Shown here: positions 3,623 through 35,410 of the stretch, in pieces
Layout of the letters: each line of letters starts with the position of its first letter
Numbering within the stretch: the first letter of the stretch is position 1
Virus record (IMG/VR): IMGVR_UViG_3300030673_000004
Location: 124,001 to 188,000 of that record
Length of the DNA: 64,000 nucleotides
Direction: 5' to 3' (one strand)
Made by a program: the position numbers and the translations under genes
The notes under the pieces: generated by a model
Seen by the model: the letters and a program-made list of their open reading frames with translations, nothing else
What the model was told of the DNA's origin: nothing
Database searches by the model: none

Positions 3623-4226
3623 GCATCAAGTTGTTATTCATCATACTGCGGGTAACAGCGACCCTATTCAGGTTATTGACGGCTGGTCTGCCGATACAGC
3701 TCGCATAGCGACTCCTTACATAATTGGTGGTAAATCTTCAGCGGGTGACACTAAATATGAGGGTGCTATAGTAAAGGCATTTGATCCTGAGTGGGATGCC
3801 TATCATTTAGGTCAAGTTCCTGGTGATCCTAAGAATATCACGAGAACCTCCTTTGGCATTGAAATCTGTAACTGGGGGTATTTGACTGTAAAAAATGGCC
3901 AGTATTACAATTATGTAAATAAGGTTGTTCCTTTAGCTCAGGTTATTGATCTTGGGTTCAAGTTTCGTGGTTATCAGTTCTGGCATGCTTACACTGATGC
4001 TCAGGTTGCAGCTCTACATGATCTTCTAATTGCACTGATTAAGAATAGGTTTCATTGGACGTACCAAGCTAAGACATGGGATGCAAAATCGTTTGATTTT
4101 AATCCAGCAGCTTTTGCTGATGATAGCATTGGTACACATGCTAATTATAGGACAGACAAGTGGGACTGTAGTCCACAACCAAAATTGATAGAAATGCTTA
4201 ATGGGTTAAACTCGGAGTTAGTCTAA
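3564..4226 (+). CDS. N-acetylmuramoyl-L-alanine amidase (Amidase_2-type endolysin or virion lysin)
   Basis: VIHHTAG zinc motif, AYHLG, SFGIEICNWG, YTDAQ and GTHANYRTDKWDCSPQP. ATG at 3564 after AAGGA. Confidence 0.85.
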   Translation: MNIIQHLLPDNQHLPTKTTKHQVVIHHTAGNSDPIQVIDGWSADTARIATPYIIGGKSSAGDTKYEGAIVKAFDPEWDAYHLGQVPGDPKNITRTSFGIEICNWGYLTVKNGQYYNYVNKVVPLAQVIDLGFKFRGYQFWHAYTDAQVAALHDLLIALIKNRFHWTYQAKTWDAKSFDFNPAAFADDSIGTHANYRTDKWDCSPQPKLIEMLNGLNSELV

Positions 4227-6946
4227 TGTCTAGTGAAGTTGTAGCTGCTACCCCAAAGTTAGATCGTTTCTCTTTGTGGAAGTCTGATTCTGACTTGGCT
4301 GGTATACCTTTTGGCTTTGAGTTTGAGTTTGCTTCACGTTTGGGCCGTGAAGATTTTGCGTCTGAGCTTAGTGACTCCTTAAATATATCTACTGATCATA
4401 TTGCTACATACGATGGGTACCACAGCAGTGATGAGGACGATAAGGACTATACTCTCTGGAATGTTGAAGGTGACTCTTCTATACATACTAGAGGAAACGA
4501 GACAGATATTGAGTTGGTGACACCTCCTCGTAACATTGCGTATTGGTCTTCACATTTGGAGACTGTCCTAGATTTGATTAAGGAACATGGGCGTACTGTA
4601 AAAGGTACAGGTGCTCATATTACTTTTTCTTATAGAGATTTGGATAATATTGACCCTATAAAGTTTGCTCTTCTTATTAATGACATTAGCATAGCAGATA
4701 CGTTTGGTAGGGCTCTGCATCATTATGCTGCTTTGTATCTAGCCAATGTGCGTAAGTATGTTTTTGACCACTATGAAATATCTGGTAAGAATATACCAGA
4801 CATACTTGAAGATATCTGCTCTGAAAAGCCTTCTGAGATATACGAGACAGAAAAATTTACATCTATTAACTTATCTAAGTTAGATAATGATCCACCCTTG
4901 ATTGAAGTTCGCAGTCCCGGTGGCTATGACTATGAGAATAAAGGATCTGATTTTTTACGTGTGTGTCGTATAATAGCTAGTGCTTTGATAGTAGCGTGTG
5001 ACAATGCTGCTTACCCTGACGTTTATGCTCACAAATTTGGTAAGTTGCTCGCTGTCGGTCAGTTTGATACGCCATTAGTTTCTAATGGTGTTCCAGATCA
5101 ATTAGGTTCCCGTTCACAGTTATGGCAGTATCAGTGGTCTGTGTCACTAGGTAATACTTCTTACACTATGCGCGCTCGGTTGGGTTTTTCTTCAGCTATT
5201 GACTATGTAATTAGTGCTGATATGGCTTTGTGTGTTTTATATGATCCGGATGAACCTACAATACGCTTAGATTGTGATCATGCTGATATAAATCAAGCAT
5301 CTCGTAACATGAAAACGCTGTTTCCTATTGCTAAATTAATTCAGTTGATCAGGCTAACACCTGTTGGTAGCTATCTCCCTGGTGTACCTGCGGATATAAT
5401 AGATAAGTGCAACCAAAGTGCTGCTACACTTGGTGATGAAAATACTAAGATATCTGATTATTTTGGTAAGAAGCCTTCTGCTAAGGTACATACATCTAAT
5501 AACATAAGTATGTTACTTAGTATTTTTGTTAAGCCAACAGCTACATCTATGATTAAAGCTGCTCGCTTGGCTGCTCTTCGGACTGCTGCTACATATCAAA
5601 TTGAGTACCTAAATAAGTTTGTTGGTGCTCTTGCTGATAATGCTTCATCCTATATTGAAAATCATTTCAAAGATGCTCAACAGTTGTATGAAGCATCTCC
5701 CGAGATACTAGGGAACTTAGCTAAGTACGCCGGTAAGCAGGATGACCCATCAGCGTTGCACAATATATTTCGTGCTGTTGGTTCAGATTTGATTAAACTA
5801 CCGTCTAGCATGTATACAGAACTTGCAAGGGATTTTGTTGCGTCTGTGCCCTTAGAGTCTGATAAAGTGTTAGATATTCTAAGTGGTGCTGTGTCCTCGA
5901 TAGGTTCGTCCAATTTACCTGCTCCTATTAAGTTATCCATGTCTGCTCAGTTGCAGACACGGGTAGACGAGTATATAGAACAAGCACCCGAGCCGGAGTT
6001 GCTTAGAGGTCTGTATTTAAGCATAGCAAATGCAAGCAAAGATAGGACAGAACTTCAGAAATTGTGCATCCTTTGTTGTCAAAAGCCGAAACTTAAAGCA
6101 CTCCTGCTTGGTCAAGTTTTAGGTAATTTTGATTATTTCATCCATGCTTTATCTTCTAAACCCGTAGATCTTTGTAACCTTATTTGGGTAGTTGATGACT
6201 TAGACATACCAGATACTGAAAAGTTGCTACTCTGGCGTTCTCAACATAATTCAACACCAAGGAATCAGTTACTAAAGCTTGCTGATTCTAGGGATACAGA
6301 ACCTTTAATAAAGTGGGATTTAGCTGCTGGTGTTGATGAGGAGTCTAGAACTCAGACACGTAAGGACCATGCTGTTATTTTGTTTGCTGCTATGCTCAAG
6401 AGTGGCTCTGTTGCTCTAAGTGCTTATGACGGCATTATGACTATGTATGCATCACTTCCCGAGAATTTACGTATGGGTTGTACTCGGTATGTATTCTCGC
6501 AGTTAACTGGCTTTTTATCTTCTCCCCGTACAAAGTTGTGGTTGGTTTTAAGTGGTTATTTGCTAAGTATGGTTGATGGTCTAGCCACCTGCACCGAATC
6601 AGACACAGCCTTAGTTCGTCGGGCACATACGTTGCCTAAGTTTACAGAAGATGTTGACTTATACCTCGGTGAGGGTTCGCAGTTCTGGCGGAAAGATCGC
6701 CCACAACACTGTGGTAAACTGCACTCTATTTTACAACAGTCCTTGTTTATTGATGATACTCCTGTGACACTACAGCAGTTAGCTACTAACAATTTTACTC
6801 TTGGTGCTGGTACTCCTGGTGTTGTGTCTTATATGTTTGGTGGAGAGAAGAAGCAGTTAGCTGAGTTTAACATCAGTCTTCTGCAGAACTACGCTCGTGC
6901 TCTGATACGGGTAGAGGCAACTATAAAAGACCGGCCCACTGCGTAG
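4226..6946 (+). CDS. Amidoligase-domain protein, paralog 1 (906 aa)
   Basis: GFEFEF, WNVEGDSSI, IELVTPP, TGAHITFS, KFTSIN and IEVRSPGG in the first ~270 aa. TAATG overlap with the amidase stop. Confidence 0.8.
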   Translation: MSSEVVAATPKLDRFSLWKSDSDLAGIPFGFEFEFASRLGREDFASELSDSLNISTDHIATYDGYHSSDEDDKDYTLWNVEGDSSIHTRGNETDIELVTPPRNIAYWSSHLETVLDLIKEHGRTVKGTGAHITFSYRDLDNIDPIKFALLINDISIADTFGRALHHYAALYLANVRKYVFDHYEISGKNIPDILEDICSEKPSEIYETEKFTSINLSKLDNDPPLIEVRSPGGYDYENKGSDFLRVCRIIASALIVACDNAAYPDVYAHKFGKLLAVGQFDTPLVSNGVPDQLGSRSQLWQYQWSVSLGNTSYTMRARLGFSSAIDYVISADMALCVLYDPDEPTIRLDCDHADINQASRNMKTLFPIAKLIQLIRLTPVGSYLPGVPADIIDKCNQSAATLGDENTKISDYFGKKPSAKVHTSNNISMLLSIFVKPTATSMIKAARLAALRTAATYQIEYLNKFVGALADNASSYIENHFKDAQQLYEASPEILGNLAKYAGKQDDPSALHNIFRAVGSDLIKLPSSMYTELARDFVASVPLESDKVLDILSGAVSSIGSSNLPAPIKLSMSAQLQTRVDEYIEQAPEPELLRGLYLSIANASKDRTELQKLCILCCQKPKLKALLLGQVLGNFDYFIHALSSKPVDLCNLIWVVDDLDIPDTEKLLLWRSQHNSTPRNQLLKLADSRDTEPLIKWDLAAGVDEESRTQTRKDHAVILFAAMLKSGSVALSAYDGIMTMYASLPENLRMGCTRYVFSQLTGFLSSPRTKLWLVLSGYLLSMVDGLATCTESDTALVRRAHTLPKFTEDVDLYLGEGSQFWRKDRPQHCGKLHSILQQSLFIDDTPVTLQQLATNNFTLGAGTPGVVSYMFGGEKKQLAEFNISLLQNYARALIRVEATIKDRPTA

Positions 6947-6953: not shown

Positions 6954-6982
6954 TTGACAGATTTGACAGGCATACTTATATT
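6954..6982 (+). promoter_or_regulatory. sigma70-type promoter (leaderless start at 6989)
   Basis: TTGACA-17 nt-TATATT; ATG 7 nt after the -10 hexamer. Confidence 0.7.
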
Positions 6983-6988: not shown

Positions 6989-9739
6989 ATGCCACGTCTT
7001 ACTGTTCGGGATAGTGTCGGTGTTTCTCTACAGAGTGTTACTTTCACTAAAAGCATGGTAGAGGATTTACTGCGTTGTGGTGATCATGAATCCGTTGCAT
7101 CGTACATAGGTAAGACTATAGCTGCTCATTATAGGGAGCAGTTATTTTTGCCTGAGTTCTGTCATTGTGTGGATGATCCTGTGGTGGTGCCTGATGACTT
7201 CCTCATGGGCTATGAGTTTGAGTTTATTTCTGCCGTATCACGTGAGTTTGCCGCTGAAATTTTTACGCATGTCTTGTCTAGTGTGTATAACCCGTGCTGT
7301 GATGCCGCCCGTTTCCATGTCACAGCTTGCTCTGGCTACCATGCAGTAGAACGTTCTAAGGGGATTTGGATCTTTGAGCATGATGGTTCGGTTAAGCCTA
7401 CAGACGCATACCCATCGGTCATTGAGCTTATAACACCCCCTATGAAGGCAGACGCTTGTTTTGCTTTTTTACCGTTAATCTTTAGCTTTATTTCTGCTAT
7501 CGGTCAGACCAATGCTTCTTGCGGTCTCCACTTTACTGTTGGTAGCCCAAAATTACGTTCTTGCTTGGACGGGTTAGAGTTTTTTACTCGGTTTTCTTCA
7601 AGTAACGTTCTATCTGAGTTTAATCGTGAGGATAATCACTACTGTGCTCCTGTGACTATTAATCGGGACTGGTTCAAGCGAGCATCGCTGGAGAAACATG
7701 CCGTATCTCGTGACCTTGATATAAGTATGGTTGAGGATCGGGAGAAGTACCGTTCTATCAATTTTTCTAAATTAGGTAGGGGCCTTATTGAGCTACGTGC
7801 CATGGGTGGAGCTCAGTATGAGTCAAAACTGAAATCAGTTCTATCTGTAAGTAAGCATTTTTTAGATACTGCCTGTCGTGCTACGTGTTTTAGTTATAAA
7901 GACAAGTCGCACAATTACCGATATTTGGCTCGTGAGCTTGGAATTCCTCATGTAGATGGCGCTGGGATTTCCGCTCAGAAGCCTCCAGATTTGCTGTCGC
8001 AAGCAGTTCCTATTATCAGAGAACTAGGTCTTCAGCTTTTTGCTGGATGTGCTCAGCGTGATCCGGACGTAGCTTTTTTTGCTGGTACTCGGGATACAAA
8101 GACTGATAAGCCTTGGTTACATATTCTTACAGTTTTCCAGTACTTTGCAGCGCAGTTTTCGTTCAAGGGCTATATTGTAAATCTACGAGCTTACATTAAT
8201 CCTTTTGGAACTCTTGTTTTTGCTGTATCTAGGGCTCTTCCTGATAGCGGTAAGTTTCAGCAAAGATCCTTGTTGTGTAGAACTATTAGCTATCTAGCAG
8301 AGCATCTACCTAGGATGCTTGGTTTTGCTTGTTTTGTGTCTTGGGATTCCAGTGATGCGGTTTCTTTTGTTTCTAAGCTACGTCAAACGAGTAGCATCTT
8401 TGTTAATTTGCGCAAAAGTCTAGCTTTGCGAGATCCAAATCACATAGCTATAAGTCCACGAACTCCTTTTGTAGGCTACCCGCAATCTACTGTAAGACTG
8501 CAAGAGCTTTTTGGAACGTCAATTGAACCGTTAACTGCGTTGCATAATAATGTTCCCTACGTGCAGAGTTCTGAGTTCCTGTTTCAGTATTTAGTTCATT
8601 TGCGTTCTGCTTATCTGTTACACATGGAAAATCCTACAACGAATGAGTTTGGGTCTACTTTTGTTAAATGCTTAGCTGCGGCTGTGCAGGACGGTGTTCC
8701 AGATATTAAACTTTTGCAAGAGGTTTATTTGCTTTCTTCGTATACTAGCGGACGGAGGCATAGTTTATATTATCATAAATATACCTCTGACTCAAGTATA
8801 AGAAGTAGTAAAGTAAATGCTCTGTTGCTTTTATCTCTAGCTCGTCAGTACGCTTTTCGGGTACGACCCTTTGTGTCTGAATTAAGTGGCACGGAATTGT
8901 CGGGTATCATTAGGGAACTCGTATCGTTGTGGGAGATTCAGGCTGCTGTTGCTGTAGAAGCACAGTGTGCTACGTCTGTATCCTGTGATATTTTAATTGT
9001 TATTAGGCTATGTATAGAAATGCACCCATCAGCTATCAGTTTTATTATTGATGCCTTAACAGATATTGCTAGTTGTCCGTCGCCGGTTGCTTCTGATAGT
9101 AGTAAGAGGGACTATCTTGTATGTTTGGTTGAGTCGTTACTGTCTAACATGTCTGTACCACTAGCTACTCGTAGATTCTTTTTTGAAGCTATCTTTTGTG
9201 GTAGCCGTTCTGTAGTAGAACATAATACTTACTCACTAAGCTCTCCTTGTATTCCTAACGTGAAAGCCCTGCTAGTTGATATTATGCAGGATTATTTGTG
9301 TACCGGAAATCTTCGTTTGCTTCGTATTCTCGTTTATGCTGGTCGTGGCTTTTGTAATACTGCTGATACTAAAACGGGAAAGTGTATTGTCACATCTGCT
9401 CTTTGGACAGCATTGGGTCCTGTTAGTTGCGGTTTCTCTTCATTGCATGATTTAATTCGTATCACACATGAGATTAGTGATACTTGCAGTAGTGATACGT
9501 ACACAGGTATTAAGAATGCTCTTGTGCGTGCTTGGGGTAGAATTAAATCGTTGTGTAAGTACCCAACAGGTACCAAATTTTGCAGTTCCGTTGACGTGTG
9601 TGCTCGATACCTTCGTTATTCTCTTTGGCGTTCTACTTTTAAGGAACTCCTTTATAATAAGCCTGCGTACTTCAAAAGCCGCATGATTGTGGCCTCTCGT
9701 ATTGAGGCTCTTTTTATGCTTCAGGATAAAATAAACTAG
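6989..9739 (+). CDS. Amidoligase-domain protein, paralog 2 (916 aa)
   Basis: GYEFEF, WIFEHDGSV, IELITPP, CGLHFTVG, KYRSIN and IELRAMGG, preceded by a ~70-aa N-terminal extension. Confidence 0.8.
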   Translation: MPRLTVRDSVGVSLQSVTFTKSMVEDLLRCGDHESVASYIGKTIAAHYREQLFLPEFCHCVDDPVVVPDDFLMGYEFEFISAVSREFAAEIFTHVLSSVYNPCCDAARFHVTACSGYHAVERSKGIWIFEHDGSVKPTDAYPSVIELITPPMKADACFAFLPLIFSFISAIGQTNASCGLHFTVGSPKLRSCLDGLEFFTRFSSSNVLSEFNREDNHYCAPVTINRDWFKRASLEKHAVSRDLDISMVEDREKYRSINFSKLGRGLIELRAMGGAQYESKLKSVLSVSKHFLDTACRATCFSYKDKSHNYRYLARELGIPHVDGAGISAQKPPDLLSQAVPIIRELGLQLFAGCAQRDPDVAFFAGTRDTKTDKPWLHILTVFQYFAAQFSFKGYIVNLRAYINPFGTLVFAVSRALPDSGKFQQRSLLCRTISYLAEHLPRMLGFACFVSWDSSDAVSFVSKLRQTSSIFVNLRKSLALRDPNHIAISPRTPFVGYPQSTVRLQELFGTSIEPLTALHNNVPYVQSSEFLFQYLVHLRSAYLLHMENPTTNEFGSTFVKCLAAAVQDGVPDIKLLQEVYLLSSYTSGRRHSLYYHKYTSDSSIRSSKVNALLLLSLARQYAFRVRPFVSELSGTELSGIIRELVSLWEIQAAVAVEAQCATSVSCDILIVIRLCIEMHPSAISFIIDALTDIASCPSPVASDSSKRDYLVCLVESLLSNMSVPLATRRFFFEAIFCGSRSVVEHNTYSLSSPCIPNVKALLVDIMQDYLCTGNLRLLRILVYAGRGFCNTADTKTGKCIVTSALWTALGPVSCGFSSLHDLIRITHEISDTCSSDTYTGIKNALVRAWGRIKSLCKYPTGTKFCSSVDVCARYLRYSLWRSTFKELLYNKPAYFKSRMIVASRIEALFMLQDKIN

Positions 9740-20187: not shown

Positions 20188-20216
20188 TTGACATTCATAC
20201 AAAATTAATGTATATT
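20188..20216 (+). promoter_or_regulatory. sigma70-type promoter with TACA-N7-TGTA (leaderless start at 20223)
   Basis: TTGACA-ttcatacaaaattaatg-TATATT. Confidence 0.85.
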
Positions 20217-20222
20217 GTGTTT

Positions 20223-20540: not shown

Positions 20541-20562
20541 ATCCTAAAAGGAGTACACGTTT

Positions 20563-20886: not shown

Positions 20887-21011
20887 CTGCTCTGGTGTTA
20901 GTAATCAGCAAAAAGCTAATATTGATGCTGCCGTTGCTATAGTTTCAAATAAAGGCGCAGCATTGATATTCTTTCTGACTATAAAGATCTTTAACTTAGG
21001 AGGCTGTGTTT

Positions 21012-21275
21012 ATGTTTGGGGATGTAACTATGTTTATTTTCTGTTTTGGTGGTGTGCTGCTCATCTGTACTTTGTGGTTCCTTGTTAAGCCATCAGTGTC
21101 AACTAAGAATAAGGATCTGGTATTTTGCTTTGCTGTTGCCTGTGCATTCTTAGCTGGTGGTTTATTCGGACTACACATTTTTCAAAGCTTCTTAGCTTTG
21201 GGTATTTCGTTGTTGATCTTGATAAAGTGTAGAGTTTCCCGATTTAATTCTTGGCTTGAGCGATATCGTAAATAA
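21012..21275 (+). CDS. Small multi-pass membrane protein
   Basis: AGGAGG SD; three hydrophobic segments. Confidence 0.6.
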   Translation: MFGDVTMFIFCFGGVLLICTLWFLVKPSVSTKNKDLVFCFAVACAFLAGGLFGLHIFQSFLALGISLLILIKCRVSRFNSWLERYRK

Positions 21276-21279
21276 TTTA

Positions 21280-21326
21280 GTTGACAAGCATACAAATTGA
21301 ATGTATATTTGTTCTTGTCACCTCAA
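21280..21326 (+). repeat. 47-bp promoter/leader direct repeat, copy 2
   Basis: 45/47 identical to 19933..19979. Confidence 0.9.
21281..21309 (+). promoter_or_regulatory. sigma70-type promoter with TACA-N7-TGTA
   Basis: TTGACA-agcatacaaattgaatg-TATATT. Confidence 0.85.
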
Positions 21327-22267: not shown

Positions 22268-22405
22268 ATGCCTGATGCTGAGCAGCCCTTACGCTATGTT
22301 GACTTTGACGGCAAGATACGAGAAGTATCTGCTGCTGTTTTAGATAACTTGGACGATTATATTCCTCAAGAAGCGTCGGCTGCCTCTGAGAGGGAGCTTA
22401 ACTAA
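22268..22405 (+). CDS. 45-aa acidic ORF below the track cutoff
   Basis: MPDAEQPLRYVDFDGKIREVSAAVLDNLDDYIPQEASAASERELN*; its TAA overlaps the next ATG (TAATG). Confidence 0.5.
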   Translation: MPDAEQPLRYVDFDGKIREVSAAVLDNLDDYIPQEASAASERELN

Positions 22406-29200: not shown

Positions 29201-30076
29201 GCATCTACTAAAATAACAACTCAAAAAGATTTAATTGTTACATATCCTAAAATGCACATTGAGTTGCAGGATGCGCCTGTGGTACCGTATCCTGCTGATT
29301 TCTCTGCTCAGTATAGATTGACACCTAAGCAATTAGCTTCTTTCTTTGGCTCTCCTAGTGGTGAAGAGGTGGATCGTGCTTCTCTGGCACCCCTGCCGTT
29401 CAAAGCATCACATCTACTGATTACTAATCTGAATGCTTACACAGTTAAGCAGCTTGATGAGCTGTACTCTTGCCCGGCACCTAGTGCGGAGGCACAATCA
29501 TTCGGTGATTCTTTGGCAAGGACTATATTTGCTGCTACTAAGTCTGGACCTTGTCCTGCTTCCTTGCTGACATCAAACATAGCACGTGCTTATATGACAT
29601 CTACATCACCGGGTATGGGAACATTCTTGTTTCAGTATATAGAATCTATTTTAATACCTGACGATGATTTTCGTAGATTTAATATGTTTACTGGTGGTAC
29701 GAGTAATCCTGAATTGGGGTCTGTTCTGTTCTCCTCGTTGCTACCTTTCTATTCTATTTATGCTTCTATTACCCATGTGGGTAGGCAACATGTTTCATTT
29801 GTTGATTTATTGGACGCCTTTATAGGTGATCATGCAGTATCTCCAGAAGCTTTCTGCTCTAAGGAATTTGTTGCTCTGTATAAATTCTGTGTTCATGTTG
29901 GTATTGTTAATAAGATTAGCTCTGATTCTTTACCTGATGCATTATTTGAGGTATATACGGGCCTTAAATTGCATACGCATGTTGCTTTGATTGATGCTTT
30001 GATACATGAGCATAAGAAATCCCATAAAGTAACATCACTATTTCCTATGTATGGGTACCCTTATTATGGCGACTGA
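26228..30076 (+). CDS. Amidoligase-domain protein, paralog 4 (1282 aa)
   Basis: CGFEAEF, YGASH, WSVETDSTI, IELVSPI, TGCHLTFS, KYRSIN and LEFRLPGG. Confidence 0.85.
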   Translation: MDIVTAAQFDRDLSKNLSSLPVRCGFEAEFASALPHDRIPTILEAFLQNPGKTDIEGIPERLGPRPGIEVNNSYGASHGGSYKSWSVETDSTIHVDNHHSYRIELVSPILTLPDMIHGLKAVMAMLRSNVELPSEYVDQDVVSLGETDKETGCHLTFSIKDIDLSKVDVLKLAVLLGEDHWGDVFGRHNNGWAEEALDHFKNWVTTKEIKDPRDLAAAVSDLCNRSALDVQDSELFKWLDNRMEKYRSINMSKTRQGVLEFRLPGGKDYQYKDDKLAIVAERFAYAFYASADPTAYADYYKQKLVRIALKFMATPEAQQRSATQIYDESKVFMRVRSTGGSSYLCLMPDDKPLSAPAMAFALKSLGEGAYSIEQDVPEQQSFRSITGTINLVKTNSILGYVSYALINTKFKLSDTVVSSLLRSFLLPRSVPDTRSVQHYIYLPHTSVDELSVSKFATTTIDVNWPESIKEAVQKEKDASSEWLAPGGSLYLSRIVAAIRNSKASDIIKLHAQYNDQLNTLIYGDFRGVHLDQLAGDPLAKNKFDLMHTVEAPAADIANYLNSSDYQREVQTAWGERFNGNRPIPFIILSSLSQLDESFVARLKTHYWLFAECFPGTVKSYADAIDPDEVSFYLDVLRLLPEEKKESLIVPVSAYIGRQLAGTLNADALSDDIFVKELNVLLEHVSDIADTGAKDTTEVELPTVLSTVSTRIILNMQGMAAQAISPVLGIIFPKLPNFVKYMETMHAHALVDSLTDDMLLNYDGTDFSNKLPPLTIKIFLSNTAKQLESAGAYTGTDVSEIATAFVLAYAKGIIDTIPKQLDSTVVSQAAVHCVLNMKNAAMEGNDELYVKLNVFVDQGTRILDIAPKLKSELYRAYLHDMSKEKETEDSLKEKGALTLAALIAIGYGTYGAQALGAGSATCFNAAVKHYRGAWTSSVTDDFLHHMNALCNLSRPLPACSLFDAISKLISTYPTTGDPAADSLRGIFSDYQVASTKITTQKDLIVTYPKMHIELQDAPVVPYPADFSAQYRLTPKQLASFFGSPSGEEVDRASLAPLPFKASHLLITNLNAYTVKQLDELYSCPAPSAEAQSFGDSLARTIFAATKSGPCPASLLTSNIARAYMTSTSPGMGTFLFQYIESILIPDDDFRRFNMFTGGTSNPELGSVLFSSLLPFYSIYASITHVGRQHVSFVDLLDAFIGDHAVSPEAFCSKEFVALYKFCVHVGIVNKISSDSLPDALFEVYTGLKLHTHVALIDALIHEHKKSHKVTSLFPMYGYPYYGD

Positions 30077-33000
30077 TTATACTGTTGTAACGGCATCTCA
30101 GTTCGATAGAGATCTTCATAGTATTAGTTCTGACTGGTCTAAGTATAAGGGTCCTGCTGTTCGCTGCGGCTTTGAAGCTGAAATGGCTTCTGCTTTATGG
30201 TGGTCTGATTTTGCAGATAAGTTACAATTGGCTCTAGGCATCAATAGGAGTAGCATAGTTGTAAGTGAGCGTTACGGCGCATCTCATGATGGGGATTACC
30301 GCTATTGGTCGGTAGAGTCAGACACATCAATTCAGGTTGATCCGGAGCACCAGTGTCAGATTGAAGTAGTCTCCCCGATACTTGGAATAGATGCTATGCT
30401 GGGGTCTTTGGAGAAGGTCTGCTCGTTGATGGCAACTAAGCAGAGTGGTAAGGCTCTAGCTATTTCAAATAACTCTACTGGATTGCATATAACATTCAGT
30501 CTAGAGGATACTAACCTAACTAAGGTCAATGTTGCTAAGCTGTACCTGTTGCTGGGTGAGGATTACTGGAGATTGGTTTTTGGGCGTAATGATACAAGCT
30601 ATGCAAAATCTGTAAAGCCTGCTTTGCTCGCTATGGTAGCTGAATTGTCTCGTTCTTCTGGCATGAAGAGCATGCAACAGTTTGATCTTGATAAGTTCTA
30701 TCAAGAGATGCGCAGTGATGACATTGGTCGCTATGGTACTATTAATATTTCCAATATAGTTAGCCAGAAAGACTTCCCCGATAAGCAGCGTATCGAGTTT
30801 AGGTTGCCTGGTGGTGCTGGTTATGAGCACAAGTTTTCATTATTAGCACGTGTAGCTCGTAGGTTTGCTTATGCTTTGTACGCATCAACCTGTGATGCTT
30901 ATGATGATGTTTTTGCACTTAAATTGTACAAGTTCCTAGATAAGTATAAAGAAGCTACTCATGAGGATGACCATCGTGTTAAAGCTATAGCAAATACCCA
31001 TGGATTCTCTTTAGTAGATTTTCCTGCAAATATGGATCAGAGTCGTGTTCGGTTATTTAGTTTCATTTATACTGGAAGTAGCCTTACGCACATAGAGGCG
31101 GATAATCCTGCTGCTGGATTCTCATCTGAGATAGAGAGTCAGATAGAGGCGTTGGCTGAGAAGTATGGTGGTCGAAGCATTTCTCTCGGGAGTCACGAGT
31201 TCAGCTTAAAGCCGGAAGTCTTGCTAACGCTGGACCATGGATCTTCGCAGAGATTGGCTTACGGTAAGTATACTGAAACATTGTTACATCTATTTGGGTT
31301 AACTACGAGCGTGCAGCTTTCTCAGTTTACTATGCAGGCTCTTGCAGAAAATTCAAATTGTACAGATATACTGTTTTCCATTATTTCTACTATGGCTGTA
31401 GGACCTCGGGGTGCTGCTGGTTGTTCATATGCTAACTTAGGTTTCTTCTTATCTCAACATGGTGGTGATTCAGATCCTTATGTAATCTATAATAAAGATT
31501 ACTTTCTTGATCATCCTGTTTATTTAGATTACTTCCTTGCTGGTTTTGGTGTAGAACCTAAAGACGGTATCTCTGATTCTTATTTGAGTGCTCTTCGTGG
31601 TATCTTGCAGTATGGTATGATACCGTCTGGTATTACCTCTAGTTTTGTTGGTAAGATAGCTGAAGCCGCTTTTGTGGCGAGTGACTCAGTAGATGCTAAG
31701 ATGCTGCTAAGTTCTTTAGCTACGAAGGGTTATTTAGTAAATGCGTCACAGGCTAGCCATGCTTTTGTACAAGAAGTACTGTCTGATACAGCTAAAGTTG
31801 ATGCATTATTCATGAGAAGAGATGTGGCAGAAATGAACCTTGGTTTTATTTATGGTGTAATAAATAAACTGGGTTTTGCTTCTGAGGTGCGTCCTGCTTT
31901 AATTCAGATAATCAAAGATCACGGCGGTTGGCGTGCATCCGAGACGTTTCCTCGTAATGCCTTAACGTTAGATTTATCTAACGCAGAACTGAACGAGATA
32001 GGTATAACAAATATACCTGGTATTAATCTGCATCCTGATATGCACACGATAAATGAGATACTCGTTGGACTTAAGAATCAGAACTATCCTAGAGACAGCA
32101 TTTCTGCTTTTTTTAATGGTCCCGACGTATTGAGTTATATTAAAACAGAAGATTTTATTGATGATGATGATTTCTGCATAAAATTAGTATCTGGTTGGCT
32201 TGCTAATTATGAAAACGTTCACGGTTCCCTTGTTGAGAATGAGATACTGCATAATGCGGGTATCGCATTTTGGTTTACATCCGCGCTGCATGAATTTGAC
32301 AAACACTTGTTATCTGTTCTTAGCTGGGGTGACGTAGATACTATTTATACCACAGTATTACATAGTAGTTATGCTAACGAGTTATTCCATAAGATTTTAT
32401 CTAGTAGTGCTGCGTCTAAAGAGTTGCCAGCATTTATGCGTGCCTACTTAACTTATGTGAGTTCTGCCAGTAGTGGTGGTATCACTAATGGTGCAATGGA
32501 TGCTCCTCCAAGTATCTATGTACCTTTGTTGAATGAGGCAGGTGTTAAAATACTAACTGCGTTTTTTGAGAAAGGCTTTATTTTTGAGCCTACGTTTAAG
32601 GCGTTGGCAATGACAGTAGACGCCTTTGTAGCATCTTCCTACATAACCGAGATAGCGCCACACTGTTTATTGCTGGATAAAGTGTTCTCAACCTATAAGA
32701 GTAAGTCTGTTGACCCTACTAATGAGAATGGCTTTTTGACTAATCGCATTGAGTCTCTTAGACGTGCGGGTTTTGATGTGCGTGATGTGGCACCAATAGC
32801 TACTAAAGAGTTACAGCATGAGACAGCACCCTATGTTCATGAGTTCTCTGCACCCTTTCAACCATCTCGTGGTGAGCGTAGATCTGTAGAAGATACAATT
32901 TCTTATATTGCAAACCCTCCGTTTCATAAATCTGACTTCTTTGGTGCTGTTGAAGCTATGCCTGCTGAAGATATGCCTGATCTTTTTGTGAAGATACAGT

Positions 33001-33593
33001 CGGGAGCACCCGTTGTTAAAGCTATGGGTTTTGGTCTGTTGACATCTGCGTCTATATACCCGATGGATGATCAGGGGAATCGCTTGATTAAACCTGAGGT
33101 ACTATTAGAGGGTCTTAAATACCCAGATTTTACTACCAACTTAGTGCTTGCTCTGGTGTCAGACGCTAAAGCAGAGACACACAGTTCTAGTACGACACAT
33201 AGAGTGTACGGTTATACTTGGAGTGATTTTTTCTATTTGCTGTTATCTCCTGATACTAAGCTAGGTCCTGTGACCTTTGATACTAAAGATTACTTAGTGA
33301 TGCTTGGTTATTTTGCAGCTTTTGTTAATCCATCTATCCTGTTATCTGAGAGATCTTTGGGATTTTATAAAACATTAGTAAATGAGATACCAGGAAGGTA
33401 TGCTGATCCTAGGACAGAGTCTTCTATTAAGCTTCTGTTGCATAAATTTGCCCGAGGTCTTGTTGAGTTTGATCCTGTTAATCACGTGCGTGTTTTAGAT
33501 CCCAATATGCCTTATCCGTTGCTTCGCTATGTGGCTAAGAATCTGTCAACAACCGCATACCTGCATAATTTCTTTGAAAACTTTTGTAAGTAG
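30066..33593 (+). CDS. Amidoligase-domain protein, paralog 5 (~1175 aa)
   Basis: CGFEAEM, YGASH, WSVESDTSI, IEVVSPI, TGLHITFS, RYGTIN and IEFRLPGG. ATG at 30051 or 30066. Confidence 0.85.
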   Translation: MATDYTVVTASQFDRDLHSISSDWSKYKGPAVRCGFEAEMASALWWSDFADKLQLALGINRSSIVVSERYGASHDGDYRYWSVESDTSIQVDPEHQCQIEVVSPILGIDAMLGSLEKVCSLMATKQSGKALAISNNSTGLHITFSLEDTNLTKVNVAKLYLLLGEDYWRLVFGRNDTSYAKSVKPALLAMVAELSRSSGMKSMQQFDLDKFYQEMRSDDIGRYGTINISNIVSQKDFPDKQRIEFRLPGGAGYEHKFSLLARVARRFAYALYASTCDAYDDVFALKLYKFLDKYKEATHEDDHRVKAIANTHGFSLVDFPANMDQSRVRLFSFIYTGSSLTHIEADNPAAGFSSEIESQIEALAEKYGGRSISLGSHEFSLKPEVLLTLDHGSSQRLAYGKYTETLLHLFGLTTSVQLSQFTMQALAENSNCTDILFSIISTMAVGPRGAAGCSYANLGFFLSQHGGDSDPYVIYNKDYFLDHPVYLDYFLAGFGVEPKDGISDSYLSALRGILQYGMIPSGITSSFVGKIAEAAFVASDSVDAKMLLSSLATKGYLVNASQASHAFVQEVLSDTAKVDALFMRRDVAEMNLGFIYGVINKLGFASEVRPALIQIIKDHGGWRASETFPRNALTLDLSNAELNEIGITNIPGINLHPDMHTINEILVGLKNQNYPRDSISAFFNGPDVLSYIKTEDFIDDDDFCIKLVSGWLANYENVHGSLVENEILHNAGIAFWFTSALHEFDKHLLSVLSWGDVDTIYTTVLHSSYANELFHKILSSSAASKELPAFMRAYLTYVSSASSGGITNGAMDAPPSIYVPLLNEAGVKILTAFFEKGFIFEPTFKALAMTVDAFVASSYITEIAPHCLLLDKVFSTYKSKSVDPTNENGFLTNRIESLRRAGFDVRDVAPIATKELQHETAPYVHEFSAPFQPSRGERRSVEDTISYIANPPFHKSDFFGAVEAMPAEDMPDLFVKIQSGAPVVKAMGFGLLTSASIYPMDDQGNRLIKPEVLLEGLKYPDFTTNLVLALVSDAKAETHSSSTTHRVYGYTWSDFFYLLLSPDTKLGPVTFDTKDYLVMLGYFAAFVNPSILLSERSLGFYKTLVNEIPGRYADPRTESSIKLLLHKFARGLVEFDPVNHVRVLDPNMPYPLLRYVAKNLSTTAYLHNFFENFCK

Positions 33594-33610: not shown

Positions 33611-35410
33611 ATGAATACAAAGCCTGTTAAACTAGGTCATACACGTATGGGGTTTGAAGCTGAGTGTTTCTTAGATACGCGCAAATTGCAGTCTGTTCAT
33701 TTGGATGTAGGTACAGCCTTATCTAAATTCGTAGGACATCATAGTCGTATCAATGATCAGCTCGGTGAGGGTAAACTTCAACATCCTAATTACTCTTACT
33801 GGAATTTAACAGATGACAGTACCATACAAATACCCAATACGTCTGCCCAGGGCGTTGAGGTTGTATCTCCTATATTATCGTACCCGCAGTTCAGTTCTTC
33901 TGTTGAACATGTTTTTGATTTTATAGATGCCTTTGGTGGAACTAATGAAAGCTGCGGTTTTCATATTGGTGTTAGCTTGGATGGTGTAGATCTGTCTGAG
34001 ACTCTTGATGTCTTAAAACTGGTTGTGTTTATTGGCGAAGCTCATATAGCTCAGATGTTTGCTCGCTTTGACAATGACTATGCTCAGCGTCTAGAGCCTT
34101 TTGTATCTGATTATTTGAGTTCTTTTCATGACGTTACAGATCAGATAAAAGAGCTAGTAAAAAGACCTTTGTATCCTGTATCTAGCAGTACGGAGCATGT
34201 TATTCCGTGGGATAAGTATTTTAGCTTTAATTTTACAAAGATAAAATCTAAAAACTATATTGAATTTAGATTAATTGGTGGTGCTGACTACCATAAAAAA
34301 GCTAAGGATGTTTTGGTAGTTGCTCGGAGACTGGCTTGGGCGGTATCTGTTGCATGCGATCCAGAAGCCCTGAAAAGTGACTATGTGAATAAGCTACTGA
34401 GGATAGCTAGTTTGAGTCCTATTAGCTCTGTGTCTACCCATGTTCGTTTGAAGTTGGATGGAAATCAATGCCATATTGACGTTCCTCCCCCTTCCGATGC
34501 TTATGCAAGAACAGCGCTGCGTGATCATTTAACGCTCTCAGCCACTAAGTCTAATGCCGGCAGCTATGCGATCACGGCATGCTCTACAGATGATTTATCC
34601 GGTATTTACCGCGACTCTTTGTATGCGTTGCTAACGACAGGTGTGGGTGGTAACTTTAAGTTTACTATCTCGCCTAAAGCTGATCGTAATGTCTTTTGGA
34701 TAGTATTCTCGCTGTTGGATTTAGTTTCTTCTAATAAGGCTTTGTTGTATCTGCTTACAGCATGTCCCTCTGTATTTTATGTACTGGCTTCCGATGTTAC
34801 ATCTAAGGCTGTGGGTCGTGTTTTAGCATTATCGCATGATGCTTCAACTGCAATAGCTCTGCGCAGAGCGTTAGCGAAATGTAATCTAGCTGATGTAATA
34901 TCTGTGTATACTGCCCTGCATATGGTACCAACGCATATGGATCCTTCTGAGTTCTTAGGTGCCCTAGTAGACACTGGTGTTGATATTTTAGATTTGCCCG
35001 ACTACGCTAAGTATGTTCCTACTGTTTTTGACTCTGCACTAGAGTCGTTCTCTTATTTGGATCTTGTTGCACATAAATATCGTGATCTTGGTGTTATTCT
35101 GCAGATTCTAACATCACTGAATCCTGTGTTGCTTATGAACTCAGATCTGTTTCCTGTGGATAGCTCAAGTTCTTTAGCTCGTATGCTTTTAGAGCAGTGC
35201 CCCTCTGACTTTGACCCGTCCTATGCTGTTTCGTATCTACCTACTCTAGTCAGTATTCTCCAGCAGTATACAACAGAAGATCTTCCTATCTTCTTTCATT
35301 TGTTCGATATAGGCGTTGCTTTTGAGCGTCCTTATATTTTTGGATTGATCACAGCGCTAAAAAGCTACAATGTGGATAAGTCGTGGACAAAATGTTTACA
35401 GTTGCCTTGA
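33611..35410 (+). CDS. Amidoligase-domain protein, paralog 6 (599 aa)
   Basis: MGFEAEC, WNLTDDSTI, VEVVSPI, CGFHIGVS, KYFSFN and IEFRLIGG. Confidence 0.85.
   Translation: MNTKPVKLGHTRMGFEAECFLDTRKLQSVHLDVGTALSKFVGHHSRINDQLGEGKLQHPNYSYWNLTDDSTIQIPNTSAQGVEVVSPILSYPQFSSSVEHVFDFIDAFGGTNESCGFHIGVSLDGVDLSETLDVLKLVVFIGEAHIAQMFARFDNDYAQRLEPFVSDYLSSFHDVTDQIKELVKRPLYPVSSSTEHVIPWDKYFSFNFTKIKSKNYIEFRLIGGADYHKKAKDVLVVARRLAWAVSVACDPEALKSDYVNKLLRIASLSPISSVSTHVRLKLDGNQCHIDVPPPSDAYARTALRDHLTLSATKSNAGSYAITACSTDDLSGIYRDSLYALLTTGVGGNFKFTISPKADRNVFWIVFSLLDLVSSNKALLYLLTACPSVFYVLASDVTSKAVGRVLALSHDASTAIALRRALAKCNLADVISVYTALHMVPTHMDPSEFLGALVDTGVDILDLPDYAKYVPTVFDSALESFSYLDLVAHKYRDLGVILQILTSLNPVLLMNSDLFPVDSSSSLARMLLEQCPSDFDPSYAVSYLPTLVSILQQYTTEDLPIFFHLFDIGVAFERPYIFGLITALKSYNVDKSWTKCLQLP

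What the first reader, a model, noticed from the sequence alone, without database searches (positions are those of the whole stretch)
4226..35410. Six-member family of large amidoligase fusion proteins with divergent C-termini inside the virion gene region
Seen: six ORFs (starts 4226, 6989, 22405, 26228, 30066, 33611; 18,474 bp in the track coordinates, about 29% of the window) share a ~250-300 aa N-terminal domain. All its motifs are kept in each copy: G-[FY]-E-x-E, W-x4-D-[GST]-[ST]-[IV], E-[LIV]-[VI]-[ST]-P, G-x-H, [KR]-[YF]-x-[ST]-x-N and E-x-R-x-x-GG. Each then carries 300-1000 aa of largely unrelated, helix-rich sequence. Established: these motifs match the glutamine-synthetase-fold COOH-NH2 ligase (Amidoligase_2) family, the superfamily that includes the Pup ligase PafA. 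Such genes usually occur singly next to a glutamine amidotransferase or AIG2 cyclotransferase, and neither is visible here. Inference: a conserved catalytic head with variable substrate-binding bodies suggests a polymorphic set of peptide- or amino-acid-tagging ligases. Their position among capsid and tail genes suggests they may be packaged and injected to modify host proteins or the envelope. This is the best candidate for an undescribed system here.
Basis: partly seen in the sequence, partly recalled or inferred. Interest (0 to 1): 0.88.

Follow-up and report, generated by a model that had tools for sequence, protein, structure and literature searches.

The report
Six amidoligase-solenoid enzymes, jumbo phage
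An uncultured 375-kb jumbo phage carries six large genes that each join an apparently active ATP-dependent amide-bond ligase head to a different helical-repeat body, a conserved and undescribed enzyme set that probably tags six different large molecules during infection.

Summary
Six + strand ORFs (906, 916, 1269, 1282, 1175 and 599 aa; 29% of the window) share a roughly 300-aa N-terminal Amidoligase_2 (PF12224) domain. Every family-invariant residue is kept in all six and in all 26 orthologues examined. The C-terminal bodies are mutually unrelated, and the one modelled folds as a HEAT-like alpha-solenoid.

The window comes from a ~375.6-kb uncultured jumbo phage whose major capsid protein is distantly phiRSL1-like. 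The set is not a hypervariable cassette. Each paralogue has full-length orthologues in several related phage lineages, with conserved gene order. The bodies do evolve 2-5 times faster than neighbouring genes.

An AIG2/GGACT cyclotransferase partner exists about 4 kb upstream of the window, so it was missed rather than absent. No glutamine amidotransferase was found.

Packaging is plausible but unproven. The nearest cultured homologue, Atu_ph07 gp196, was detected in virions by mass spectrometry, and one relative is fused to SLT and LysM domains. Against this, sigma-70-like promoters and apparent co-transcription with ribonucleotide reductase suggest expression that is not strictly late.

Best reading: six substrate-specific carboxylate-amine ligases acting on macromolecules. 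This is a new variant of a known enzyme kind.

The parts
4226..6946 (+). A1: amidoligase head (aa 1 to about 290) plus a body of about 600 aa (906 aa total)
   Evidence: PF12224 E 5.6e-9. Orthologues are P0005 (76%) and P0017 (37%), both full length. The start ATG overlaps the stop of the upstream Amidase_2 gene (TAATG), with a GGAG 9 nt upstream.
6989..9739 (+). A2: most divergent paralogue, with a leader of about 70 aa, an amidoligase head (aa 5 to about 332 by the family HMM) and a body of about 580 aa (916 aa total)
   Evidence: PF12224 scores 18.3 bits, below the gathering score of 22. BLASTP to A1 gives E 2e-16. All invariant residues are kept. Orthologues are P0010 (63%) and P0035 (33%). 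It sits on its own deep branch in the domain tree.
22405..26214 (+). A3: amidoligase head plus a body of about 930 aa (1269 aa total); first gene of the four-gene tandem block
   Evidence: PF12224 E 2e-12. Orthologues are P0001 (67%), P0006 (41%) and P0024. It forms a clade with A4 and A5 at 100/99 support.
26228..30076 (+). A4: amidoligase head plus a body of about 950 aa (1282 aa total)
   Evidence: PF12224 E 2.1e-7. Orthologues are P0003 (70%), P0008 (44%), P0015, P0020 and P0022.
30066..33593 (+). A5: amidoligase head, a small beta linker and an alpha-solenoid body of about 830 aa (1175 aa total; an alternative ATG lies at 30051)
   Evidence: PF12224 E 3.8e-11. The AF2 model of aa 311-1175 has pLDDT 72.8 and is all-alpha after a small beta unit. 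Foldseek hits are HEAT/solenoid proteins: a chain of the Fanconi anaemia core-ID complex (7kzv_U), importin-13, CRM1 and condensin Ycg1, with E 6e-4 to 3e-2 and TM 0.14-0.20. The body is found only in this phage clade.
33611..35410 (+). A6: shortest member, with an amidoligase head (aa 2-280), a small beta unit (aa 279-324) and a helical body of about 270 aa (599 aa total)
   Evidence: PF12224 E 1.2e-7. phrog_2443 'amidoligase' E 3e-9. The AF2 model has pLDDT 73.7. Orthologues are P0007, P0014, P0026 and P0030.
3564..4226 (+). Amidase_2 (N-acetylmuramoyl-L-alanine amidase) gene translationally coupled to A1 (the ORF as listed starts at 3543; the likely ATG is 3564)
   Evidence: PF01510 E 1.3e-7. 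phrog_1794 amidase. The Amidase_2 to A1 to A2 order is conserved in the close relative L012 and the divergent relative L011.
6954..6982 (+). Sigma-70-like promoter motif (TTGACA-N17-TATATT) immediately upstream of the A2 start
   Evidence: The motif has 10 sites in the window against 0.58 expected by chance.
19934..21309 (+). Three copies of the same promoter-like motif with a conserved spacer (19934, 20188, 21281), ahead of the small ORFs that lead into A3-A6. No terminator is predicted between 21309 and 22405.
381..1496 (+). Major capsid protein (context), followed by a strong terminator-like hairpin at 1519-1548
   Evidence: phrog_2522 E 1e-48. About 30% identity to the capsid proteins of phiRSL1, Dickeya/Erwinia jumbo phages, NCTB and Motura. 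Terminator.
9833..12238 (+). Ribonucleotide reductase (context). It lies directly downstream of A2 with no predicted terminator before 12258-12285.
   Evidence: phrog_367 E 2e-169. Terminator scan.
54963..57107 (+). Large terminase subunit (context)
   Evidence: phrog_17415 E 4e-116.

Best explanation
The six genes encode a conserved set of ATP-dependent carboxylate-amine ligases of the Amidoligase_2 family. For the related glutamine-synthetase-type ligases, established knowledge is that a carboxylate is activated as an acyl-phosphate and then attacked by an amine to form an amide or isopeptide bond. Each protein has a catalytically intact ligase head, a short beta linker, and its own large alpha-solenoid (HEAT-like) body. 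I infer that the body is the substrate-recognition platform, so the six enzymes carry out the same chemistry on six different large substrates, most likely proteins of the host or of the phage itself. The phage also encodes a stand-alone GGACT/AIG2 gamma-glutamyl(amine) cyclotransferase about 8 kb upstream of A1. Relatives fuse that domain directly to amidoligase domains. This suggests the bond made is of the gamma-glutamyl-amine type and that the cyclotransferase trims or reverses it. Delivery as capsid cargo that enters the cell with the DNA is plausible but unproven. Shown here: domain identity, intact invariant residues, unrelated solenoid bodies, conservation of the set across a phage clade, faster evolution of the bodies, and presence of the GGACT partner. 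Inferred: enzymatic activity (about 0.85), macromolecular/protein substrates (about 0.55), gamma-glutamyl chemistry (about 0.4), and packaging into virions (about 0.4).
For: Domain identity and activity:
- PF12224 is found at the N-terminus of all six proteins.
- Eight charged or metal-ligand-type residues (E27, E29, D90, E104, H154, R187, E260, R262 in A4 numbering) are invariant in all 32 members of the six orthologue groups. The core E-x-E, D, E, H and E-x-R residues are also invariant across 51 more distant relatives.
- In the A6 model these residues sit on or beside successive beta strands.

Bodies:
- They are mutually unrelated.
- The A5 body model is an alpha-solenoid resembling karyopherins, the Fanconi anaemia ID complex and condensin HEAT subunits.
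- The A5 body occurs only in this clade.

Conservation and rates:
- Each paralogue has full-length orthologues.
- Six orthologue groups each have 100% support in the domain tree.
- Synteny holds in L009, L012, L011 and L008.
- Against the close relative, neighbouring genes are 82-100% identical while A3-A5 are 67-70% and A6 is 81%. Body dN is 0.16-0.28 against 0.05-0.10 for neighbours. In the divergent relative L008, A5 and A6 are 30% and 43% identical while their neighbours are 70% and 53%. This pattern fits target-interface evolution.

GGACT link:
- L002:5004-5558 hits PF06094 at E 9e-20. The gene is conserved in L012 and L019.
- GGACT is fused to two amidoligase domains in P0016 and to one in a 944-aa neighbour of P0034.

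Packaging:
- Atu_ph07 gp196 is an Amidoligase_2 protein adjacent to the portal gene. It was found in virions with 14 unique peptides and 30% coverage (PMC6102473 Table S5).
- P0034 combines SLT, LysM and two amidoligase domains in one 2288-aa protein on a contig that also carries DnaJ and ClpB genes, as Atu_ph07 does.
- The genes lie between prohead protease/MCP and TerL.
Against: - There is no biochemical evidence for any PF12224 member in the literature I could search.
- The glutamine-synthetase-like fold was not confirmed here. Foldseek of the A6 model gave nothing significant: the best hit was E 0.016 with TM about 0.1, and a glutamine synthetase appeared only at E 0.14. Residues 143-213 of that model were poorly predicted. 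PDB profile searches found no homologue.
- Solenoid matches have low TM-scores (0.14-0.20) and indicate a fold class, not homology or a substrate.
- The GGACT gene is about 8 kb from A1 and 26 kb from A3, so the linkage in this genome is loose.
- Against packaging: a sigma-70-like promoter motif shared with accessory-gene blocks sits before A2 and before the ORFs leading into A3-A6. A1-A2 appear co-transcribed with RNR. No tail genes were identified nearby. The Atu_ph07 virions were only PEG-purified, and that proteome also contained a topoisomerase subunit.
- gp196 belongs to a different, shorter (about 500 aa) branch of the family.
Confidence: 0.5

Rival explanations
1. The proteins are not packaged. 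They are intracellular enzymes that act one after another, in the manner of the Mur ligases, to build or remodel a peptide-like product. Candidate products are a small metabolite or the peptidoglycan stem peptide and its precursors, with the adjacent Amidase_2 and the GGACT enzyme working on the same substrate.
For: - Many close relatives carry two or three amidoligase domains in a single polypeptide (P0012, P0013, P0016, P0019, P0021, P0023, P0027, P0028, P0033, P0034).
- Linked peptide ligases often catalyse successive ligations (PMC4431377).
- Amidase_2 is translationally coupled to A1, and that arrangement is conserved at deep divergence.
- Relatives are fused to SLT, LysM and GH19 cell-wall domains.
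- Sigma-70-like promoters and apparent co-transcription with RNR suggest early or middle expression.
- In LUZ24-like phages the amidoligase sits in the early module with a GATase and an ATP-grasp ligase (PMC3890496).
Against: - Six different, non-homologous solenoid bodies of 320-960 aa are hard to justify for small-molecule or stem-peptide substrates.
- The genes lie in two separate clusters.
- No GATase, carrier protein or transporter was found within -20 kb to +10 kb of the window.
- The bodies evolve faster than their neighbours, which is unusual for a fixed biosynthetic pathway.
Confidence: 0.25
2. The proteins are head-assembly or inner-capsid components. They would either crosslink or tag the phage's own capsid or core proteins with isopeptide bonds, or serve mainly as bulky internal scaffold proteins, like the paralogous inner-body proteins of other giant phages.
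For: - The genes lie between prohead protease, a virion protein and MCP on one side and TerL on the other.
- Homologue gp196 is virion-associated and sits next to the portal gene in Atu_ph07.
- Large paralogous families of head proteins are a known feature of giant phages (my own knowledge of phiKZ-like phages, not tested here).
Against: - Structural partners usually co-evolve slowly, yet these are the fastest-evolving genes in the block.
- There is no similarity to any virion protein family in PHROGs, BFVD or PDB.
- Strict conservation of catalytic residues argues against a purely structural role.
- The promoter evidence is not typical of late genes.
Confidence: 0.12
3. The enzymes take part in DNA or nucleotide hypermodification, adding amino-acid or amine groups to modified bases, with the solenoid bodies clamping DNA.
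For: - Amidoligase and amidotransferase genes co-occur with thymidine-hypermodification clusters in viral metagenomes (PMC8989533).
- Relatives are fused or adjacent to a cytidylyltransferase-like nucleotidyltransferase and an NT5C nucleotidase (P0012 and the neighbours of P0034). RsoM2USA_22 near ORF26 is CTP_transf_like plus NUDIX.
- The top structural hit for the A5 body is a chain of the DNA-bound Fanconi anaemia core-ID complex, and a DNA-bound condensin Ycg1 structure is also among the hits.
- dUTPase and RNR genes are nearby.
Against: - No 5-hmdU kinase, dUMP hydroxymethylase, glycosyl/pyrophosphoryl-transferase-type or GATase gene was recognised in the window or its flanks.
- Six paralogues with unrelated bodies are not expected for one base modification.
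- The solenoid hits are generic and include protein-binding karyopherins at equal scores.
Confidence: 0.1
4. The heads are inactive pseudo-enzymes and the family is just a set of large helical proteins of unrelated function that share an ancestral N-terminal module.
For: - No activity has been shown for any member.
- A2 falls below the Pfam gathering score.
Against: - All eight candidate catalytic residues are invariant in 32 of 32 proteins across six groups. Within those groups overall identity falls to 20-40%.
- Head dN is as low as that of conserved neighbours.
Confidence: 0.03

Closest known systems
Pfam PF12224 Amidoligase_2 proteins of small phages (e.g. LUZ24-like Pseudomonas phages, UFV-P2 ORF23)
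   Same: They have the same catalytic domain family. They are phage-encoded and their substrate is unknown.
   Different: Those are single-domain proteins of about 385 aa, present in one copy. They lie in the early module next to a class-II glutamine amidotransferase, an ATP-grasp ligase and a COOH-NH2_lig protein (PMC3890496). Here there are six copies of 599-1282 aa, each with a large solenoid body. No GATase or ATP-grasp partner was found, and the genes lie in the head-gene region of a jumbo phage.
Agrobacterium jumbo phage Atu_ph07 gp196 (AUZ94978.1) and Ralstonia phage RsoM2USA ORF26
   Same: They are the nearest homologues in cultured phages, with 27-35% identity over the head, and both hit Amidoligase_2. 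Both come from jumbo phages. gp196 lies beside the portal gene and was detected in the virion proteome.
   Different: They are about 500-523 aa and single copy. The conserved core starts about 200 residues into the protein, and there is no long solenoid body. They belong to a different phage lineage (Rak2/XacN1-like, T4-type core genes). ORF26 was not among the ten virion bands analysed.
Giant multi-amidoligase proteins from metagenomes (P0012, P0016, P0034 and others)
   Same: They are among the closest relatives of the heads outside the clade (230-265 bits). The ligase module is again present in multiple copies.
   Different: The copies are fused in one polypeptide rather than spread over paralogous genes. 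They are combined with other enzymatic domains: GGACT, SLT+LysM, CTP_transf_like and NT5C. They do not carry solenoid bodies.
Pup ligase PafA / Dop (glutamine-synthetase-fold protein ligases of actinobacteria)
   Same: From established knowledge, these are carboxylate-amine ligases that use an acyl-phosphate intermediate to make an isopeptide bond to a protein lysine. That is the kind of reaction proposed here.
   Different: No Pup_ligase Pfam hit was found at E <= 0.1. There is no PDB sequence hit, and no Pup-like tag or proteasome genes were seen. The relationship is at most at superfamily level and was not demonstrable with these tools.
Ligase plus AIG2-like cyclotransferase pairs (e.g. BtrJ/BtrG in butirosin biosynthesis; mammalian GGACT acting on epsilon-(gamma-glutamyl)-lysine)
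   Same: An ATP-dependent ligase that installs a gamma-glutamyl amide is paired with a GGACT-family enzyme that removes it as 5-oxoproline (my knowledge, not tested here). The same domain pairing is seen in this genome and as fusions in relatives.
   Different: BtrJ is an ATP-grasp enzyme, not a GS-like one. Substrates here are unknown, and the pairing in this genome is by loose proximity only.
Packaged enzymes and paralogous internal head proteins of large phages (T4 internal proteins and Alt, N4 virion RNA polymerase, phiKZ-type inner-body families)
   Same: This is an analogy. These are large, often paralogous proteins encoded near head genes that travel in the capsid and act on the host at the start of infection (my knowledge).
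   Different: There is no sequence or fold relationship. Packaging of A1-A6 is untested, and none of those systems uses amidoligase chemistry.

Membership tests
Amidoligase_2 (Pfam PF12224) | Significant match to the family HMM above the curated gathering score | tested here: met
   Five of six score above 22 bits (31.5-48.0 bits). A2 scores 18.3 bits but is linked by BLASTP to A1 (E 2e-16). A2's orthologue group branches within the set of PF12224-containing proteins recovered by the family profile.
Amidoligase_2 (Pfam PF12224) | Conserved motif set (G-x-E-x-E, D, E...P, G-x-H, F-x-R, N, E-x-R-x-x-G-G) | tested here: met
   The residues are invariant in all six paralogues and in all 32 clade members. 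The core residues are invariant in 51 distant relatives.
Amidoligase_2 (Pfam PF12224) | Glutamine-synthetase-like (GCS/GS clan) catalytic fold | tested here: inconclusive
   In the A6 AF2 model the invariant residues sit on or next to successive beta strands. Foldseek against PDB gave no significant hit, with a glutamine synthetase (4bax_A) only at E 0.14 and rank 21. PDB profile searches were empty.
Amidoligase_2 (Pfam PF12224) | Genomic association with a glutamine amidotransferase and/or AIG2/GGACT cyclotransferase | tested here: met
   A GGACT/AIG2 gene is present at L002:5004-5558, about 4 kb upstream of the window, and in relative L012. GGACT fusions occur in relatives. No GATase was found from -20 kb to +10 kb.
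Amidoligase_2 (Pfam PF12224) | ATP-dependent carboxylate-amine ligase activity | not testable with these tools
   This needs biochemistry. No characterised member was found in the searchable literature.
Pup ligase (PafA/Dop, PF03136) pupylation system | Match to the Pup_ligase family model | tested here: not met
   Only PF12224 was reported at E <= 0.1 for all six. No PafA or Dop chain appeared in the PDB sequence searches.
Pup ligase (PafA/Dop, PF03136) pupylation system | Small Pup-like tag protein and proteasome/Mpa partners | not tested
   No such Pfam hit occurred among the ORFs scanned. Small ORFs were not examined systematically for tag-like C-termini.
Virion-packaged (ejected) phage enzymes | Protein physically present in purified virions | not testable with these tools
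   The phage is uncultured. The only indirect evidence is that homologue Atu_ph07 gp196 was detected in PEG-purified virions with 14 peptides and 30% coverage.
Virion-packaged (ejected) phage enzymes | Gene embedded in a late/structural transcription unit | tested here: inconclusive
   The genes lie between protease/MCP and TerL. However, sigma-70-like promoter motifs precede A2 and the A3-A6 block, RNR follows A2 without a terminator, and no tail genes were recognised.
Polymorphic effector/toxin-type gene sets | Conserved module joined to rapidly swapped, strain-variable cassettes, usually with cognate immunity genes | tested here: not met
   Each body is vertically conserved over its full length in orthologues down to about 20-40% identity. 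Omega is below 0.25. No immunity-like partner genes are evident. The only signs of change are faster divergence and some body remodelling at deep divergence.

The most novel reading that the evidence does not exclude
A clade of jumbo phages carries its own protein-tagging system. Six 'writer' ligases, each aimed by a different solenoid at a different host or phage protein, would be paired with a GGACT 'eraser'. At least some of the writers would be delivered pre-made inside the capsid. The system would install gamma-glutamyl-type isopeptide marks that reprogramme the cell at the start of infection, making it a phage counterpart of pupylation or ubiquitin-like tagging built on the Amidoligase_2 fold.
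Probability: 0.2. Interest if true: 0.85.

Novelty: new variant of a known kind. Interest (0 to 1): 0.62.

Why it matters
Amidoligase_2 is a large family. The profile built here finds more than 5,500 cluster representatives. Yet I could find no characterised member and no solved structure.

This phage clade spends about 18.5 kb on six intact copies, each tied to a different large binding scaffold. Selection keeps every catalytic residue while the scaffolds diverge faster than the surrounding genes. That pattern is what one expects of enzymes working at a host-virus interface.

If the proteins tag other proteins, they would define a new class of phage-encoded post-translational modification, and the ligase/GGACT pair would be a ready-made writer/eraser pair for study. 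If they are capsid cargo, they would add a new enzymatic activity to the short list of enzymes phages inject.

Even the conservative reading is useful. It gives six natural head-plus-adaptor constructs with which to find the first substrates of this family.

Tried and rejected
- Near-identity DNA search of 20 kb against cultured phages found no match.
- tblastn of heads against cultured phages found only Atu_ph07, RsoM2USA, SCTP-2 and two uncultured huge phages.
- IMG/VR scans with A4, the MCP, the A6 family and the six-head alignment found only the source contig plus a few distant short contigs. No further copies were detected elsewhere in the genome, though the pattern-based scan is not exhaustive.
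- A GTDB representative-genome scan found no relative.
- Pfam and PHROG scans of the bodies and of the large neighbouring proteins (1475, 1134, 973 aa) gave nothing. tblastn of the 1134-aa and 1475-aa neighbours gave nothing informative.
- PDB sequence and profile searches with the heads gave no true hits.
- Foldseek of the full-length A6 model was not significant. Foldseek of the A5 body against BFVD was not significant.
- Profile-profile comparison of bodies between paralogues gave no relationship beyond about 20% probability for A3-A5 and A4-A5.
- A search for a T4-type late promoter (TATAAATA) showed no enrichment.
- dN/dS is only semi-quantitative because dS is saturated at 1.1-2.2.
- The idea that Atu_ph07 gp195 is the same cytidylyltransferase-like partner seen in other relatives was rejected. 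It is an RlaP-type nucleotidyltransferase.
- Iyer et al. 2009 (PMC3268129), the primary description of the family, is not held in the library. Statements about it therefore rest on memory.

Full report
Observation. The six ORFs are present on the + strand at the coordinates given. A1 is 4226-6946 (906 aa), A2 is 6989-9739 (916 aa), A3 is 22405-26214 (1269 aa), A4 is 26228-30076 (1282 aa), A5 is 30066-33593 (1175 aa, or 1180 aa from an ATG at 30051) and A6 is 33611-35410 (599 aa). Together they cover 18,474 bp, which is 28.9% of the window. Pfam reports one family for each protein, PF12224 Amidoligase_2, and always at the N-terminus. Five score above the gathering threshold. A2 does not (18.3 bits against 22) but is tied to the others by BLASTP and by the shared invariant residues. 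Similarity between paralogues stops after 250-390 residues.

Source and setting. The window is positions 124,001-188,000 of IMGVR_UViG_3300030673_000004, a 375,537-bp contig. The same genome was assembled at about 375.6 kb in nine samples, which suggests it is complete or nearly so. No cultured phage matches at the DNA level. The major capsid protein (381-1496) is about 30% identical to those of phiRSL1, the Dickeya/Erwinia jumbo phages, NCTB and Motura. All recognised genes but one run on the + strand.

Gene order. Just upstream of the window lie a dUTPase, a GGACT/AIG2 cyclotransferase, an exonuclease-like gene, the prohead protease, a 641-aa protein and a virion structural protein. Within the window come the capsid protein, small ORFs, an Amidase_2 gene, A1, A2, ribonucleotide reductase, orphan genes including a 1475-aa protein, a block of small ORFs, A3-A4-A5-A6, more orphans (1134 and 973 aa), an AAA ATPase, the large terminase, an ADP-ribosylglycohydrolase and a radical-SAM protein. 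This is a head-gene neighbourhood interleaved with metabolic and accessory genes. No tail gene was recognised.

The heads. In A4 numbering, G25, E27, E29, W85, D90, E104, P108, G152, H154, F185, R187, N250, E260, R262, G265, G266, Y269 and K272 are invariant in the six paralogues. The eight charged or metal-ligand-type residues among them are unchanged in all 32 proteins of the six orthologue groups. Within those groups overall identity falls to 20-40%. The core residues are also invariant in 51 more distant relatives. In the AlphaFold model of A6 they lie on or beside successive beta strands. From general knowledge, that layout resembles the curved antiparallel sheet of glutamine-synthetase-type ligases. 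The fold itself could not be confirmed. Foldseek gave no significant hit, part of the head was poorly modelled, and no solved structure is detectable by sequence profile. I conclude that all six are very probably active enzymes of the Amidoligase_2 family. I treat the link to PafA as unverified superfamily-level background.

The bodies. After the head and a small beta unit (A6 residues 279-324, A5 residues about 313-346), each protein continues with 270-950 residues of helices. The bodies are unrelated to one another by BLASTP. Profile-profile comparison of orthologue alignments agrees, with only weak A3-A5 and A4-A5 signals. The model of the A5 body (pLDDT 72.8) is an alpha-solenoid. Its best PDB neighbours are a chain of the Fanconi anaemia core-ID complex, importin-13, CRM1 and other karyopherins, and the condensin HEAT subunit Ycg1 (E 6e-4 to 3e-2, TM 0.14-0.20). 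That identifies a fold class used widely to grip proteins or nucleic acids. It does not establish homology. A word-based search with the A5 body found only itself and two orthologues.

Conservation and tempo. A profile of the six heads finds 5,558 cluster representatives at E < 1e-3 and 568 at E < 1e-30. Among the best hits, every paralogue has full-length orthologues of matching size at about 65-75%, 35-45% and 20-35% identity. A maximum-likelihood tree of the heads resolves six groups, each with 100% support. A3, A4 and A5 form one clade (100/99), which indicates an old tandem triplication. A1, A2 and A6 are separate deep branches. Gene order is conserved in a close relative (L012 and L009) and largely conserved in divergent ones (L011 and L008). 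L008 shows shorter, different bodies at the A3 and A4 positions. The set is therefore ancient and vertically inherited, not a swapping cassette array.

The ligases are nonetheless the fastest-evolving genes in their block. Against the close relative, neighbouring genes are 82-100% identical in protein, while A3-A5 are 67-70% and A6 is 81%. Body dN is 0.16-0.28, head dN is 0.07-0.14 and neighbour dN is 0.05-0.10. Omega is below 0.25 everywhere, although dS is saturated. In the divergent relative, A5 and A6 are 30% and 43% identical while the flanking genes are 70% and 53%.

Family-wide associations. Many close relatives outside the clade carry two or three amidoligase domains in one polypeptide. 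Some add other domains. P0016 has GGACT/AIG2 plus two amidoligase domains. P0034 has SLT, LysM and two amidoligase domains in 2,288 aa. It is flanked by a cytidylyltransferase-like gene, an NT5C-like gene and a GGACT-amidoligase fusion, on a contig with DnaJ and ClpB genes. P0012 has a cytidylyltransferase-like domain, three amidoligase domains and NT5C. In this genome the GGACT partner is a separate 166-aa gene about 4 kb upstream of the window, and it is conserved in the relative. No glutamine amidotransferase was found from 20 kb upstream to 10 kb downstream of the window.

Packaging. In favour: the nearest cultured homologue, Atu_ph07 gp196, is an Amidoligase_2 protein encoded next to the portal gene. 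It was detected in virions with 14 unique peptides and 30% coverage (PMC6102473, Table S5). The SLT+LysM fusion resembles ejection proteins that carry a cell-wall hydrolase. The genes also sit in the head region. Against: those virions were only PEG-purified, and the proteome also contained a topoisomerase subunit. gp196 belongs to a shorter branch of the family. A sigma-70-like motif (TTGACA-N17-TATATT, mostly with a conserved spacer) occurs ten times in the window against 0.58 expected. It precedes accessory-gene blocks, A2, and the small ORFs leading into A3-A6, but not the capsid or terminase genes. A1-A2 also run into the ribonucleotide reductase gene without a predicted terminator. I put packaging at about 0.4.

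Mechanism. The best-supported account is a set of six ATP-dependent carboxylate-amine ligases that perform one chemistry on six different large substrates chosen by their solenoid bodies. The GGACT enzyme would be the trimming or reversing partner, which points to gamma-glutamyl-amine bonds. Three rivals remain. The first is a non-packaged sequential ligation pathway, possibly acting on peptidoglycan precursors. The translationally coupled and deeply conserved Amidase_2-A1 pair supports it, as do the cell-wall domain fusions. The second is a role in head assembly or as internal scaffold. The third is DNA or nucleotide modification, suggested by literature co-occurrence (PMC8989533) and by the nucleotidyltransferase/NT5C associations. 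A pseudo-enzyme reading is effectively excluded.

Comparison and novelty. Phage amidoligases are known as annotations. In LUZ24-like phages they are single 385-aa early genes beside a GATase and an ATP-grasp ligase (PMC3890496). They are also noted near thymidine-hypermodification genes. A jumbo-phage survey mentions the family only in its reference list (PMC7824862). I found no description of a multi-paralogue set of amidoligase-solenoid fusions, nor of multi-amidoligase giant proteins. The proteins pass the membership tests for Amidoligase_2 that could be run. They fail or cannot be tested for PafA-type pupylation, and they fail the test for a polymorphic cassette system. I rate this a new variant of a known kind, with moderately high interest.

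Limits. No experiment bears directly on these proteins. The alignments behind the structure models were shallow (5-7 sequences). Only about 94 kb of the 375-kb genome was inspected. Promoter and terminator calls are consensus scans, not evidence of function.

Noticed in passing
window 6954, 19934, 20188, 21281, 46127, 47344, 50276(-), 50887(-), 57114, 62256: A sigma-70-like motif, TTGACA-N17-TATATT, with a conserved spacer in most copies (e.g. ...ATACAAAATTAATG...), occurs 10 times against 0.58 expected. It always sits in short gaps ahead of small-ORF or accessory-gene blocks and never before the capsid or terminase genes. It is probably the phage's early/middle promoter class.
   Followed up: partly
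window 20208-20540 vs L009:604-936: A 110-aa ORF is 100% identical in protein to its counterpart in the relative (dS 0.014), and the next small ORF matches 38 of 38 residues. Flanking genes have dS above 1. This points to a recent recombination patch between two otherwise diverged phages.
   Followed up: partly
L002:5004-5558 (about 4.1-4.6 kb upstream of window position 1); also L012:1206-1703 and L019:14806-15306: A stand-alone GGACT/AIG2-like gamma-glutamyl cyclotransferase gene (PF06094, E 9e-20) sits three genes upstream of the prohead protease. It is the 'missing' partner of the amidoligases.
   Followed up: yes
L010 (P0012), the contig of P0034 (no DNA held), L004:11163-12197: Relatives of the ligase head are repeatedly fused or adjacent to a cytidylyltransferase-like nucleotidyltransferase and an NT5C nucleotidase. 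In RsoM2USA a CTP_transf_like+NUDIX gene lies about 2 kb (four annotated genes) downstream of the amidoligase. This may link part of the family to nucleotide or NAD metabolism.
   Followed up: partly
L004:2306-7119 (RsoM2USA ORFs 28-30): The Ralstonia jumbo phage carries a complete PrkA-DUF444-SpoVR trio (the bacterial yeaG-yeaH-ycgB type stress module) a few hundred bp upstream of its amidoligase gene, separated by one small ORF.
   Followed up: no
window 58333-59229, 63080-63916, 48275-49576; L019:5252-5929: Accessory genes in the same genome include an ADP-ribosylglycohydrolase, a radical-SAM protein and a BCS1-like AAA ATPase. Upstream of the window there is a protein with the precomputed Pfam hit PF25185 (Tad3), plus an RNA ligase, a weak macro-domain hit and a Pyr_excise gene.
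   Followed up: no
L012:15596-17929 vs window 9833-12238: In the close relative, the ribonucleotide reductase gene carries a PT-HINT hit and a faint Intein_splicing hit. In the window, the RNR matches its PHROG profile in two stretches. An intein may be present, but I did not check.
   Followed up: no
window 13422-17849, 38304-41708, 42358-45279: Three large ORFs (1475, 1134 and 973 aa) flanking the amidoligase clusters have no Pfam or PHROG match. Two of them were also searched against cultured phages and found essentially nothing. The 1134-aa protein and the first 413 residues of the 973-aa protein are well conserved in the relative (90% and 83%). They could be unrecognised structural proteins.
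   Followed up: partly
L011:7957-10519: In a divergent relative the A2 position is occupied by a 283-aa amidoligase-only gene followed by an overlapping 576-aa ORF. This is either a split or frameshifted A2 orthologue or an assembly error.
   Followed up: no
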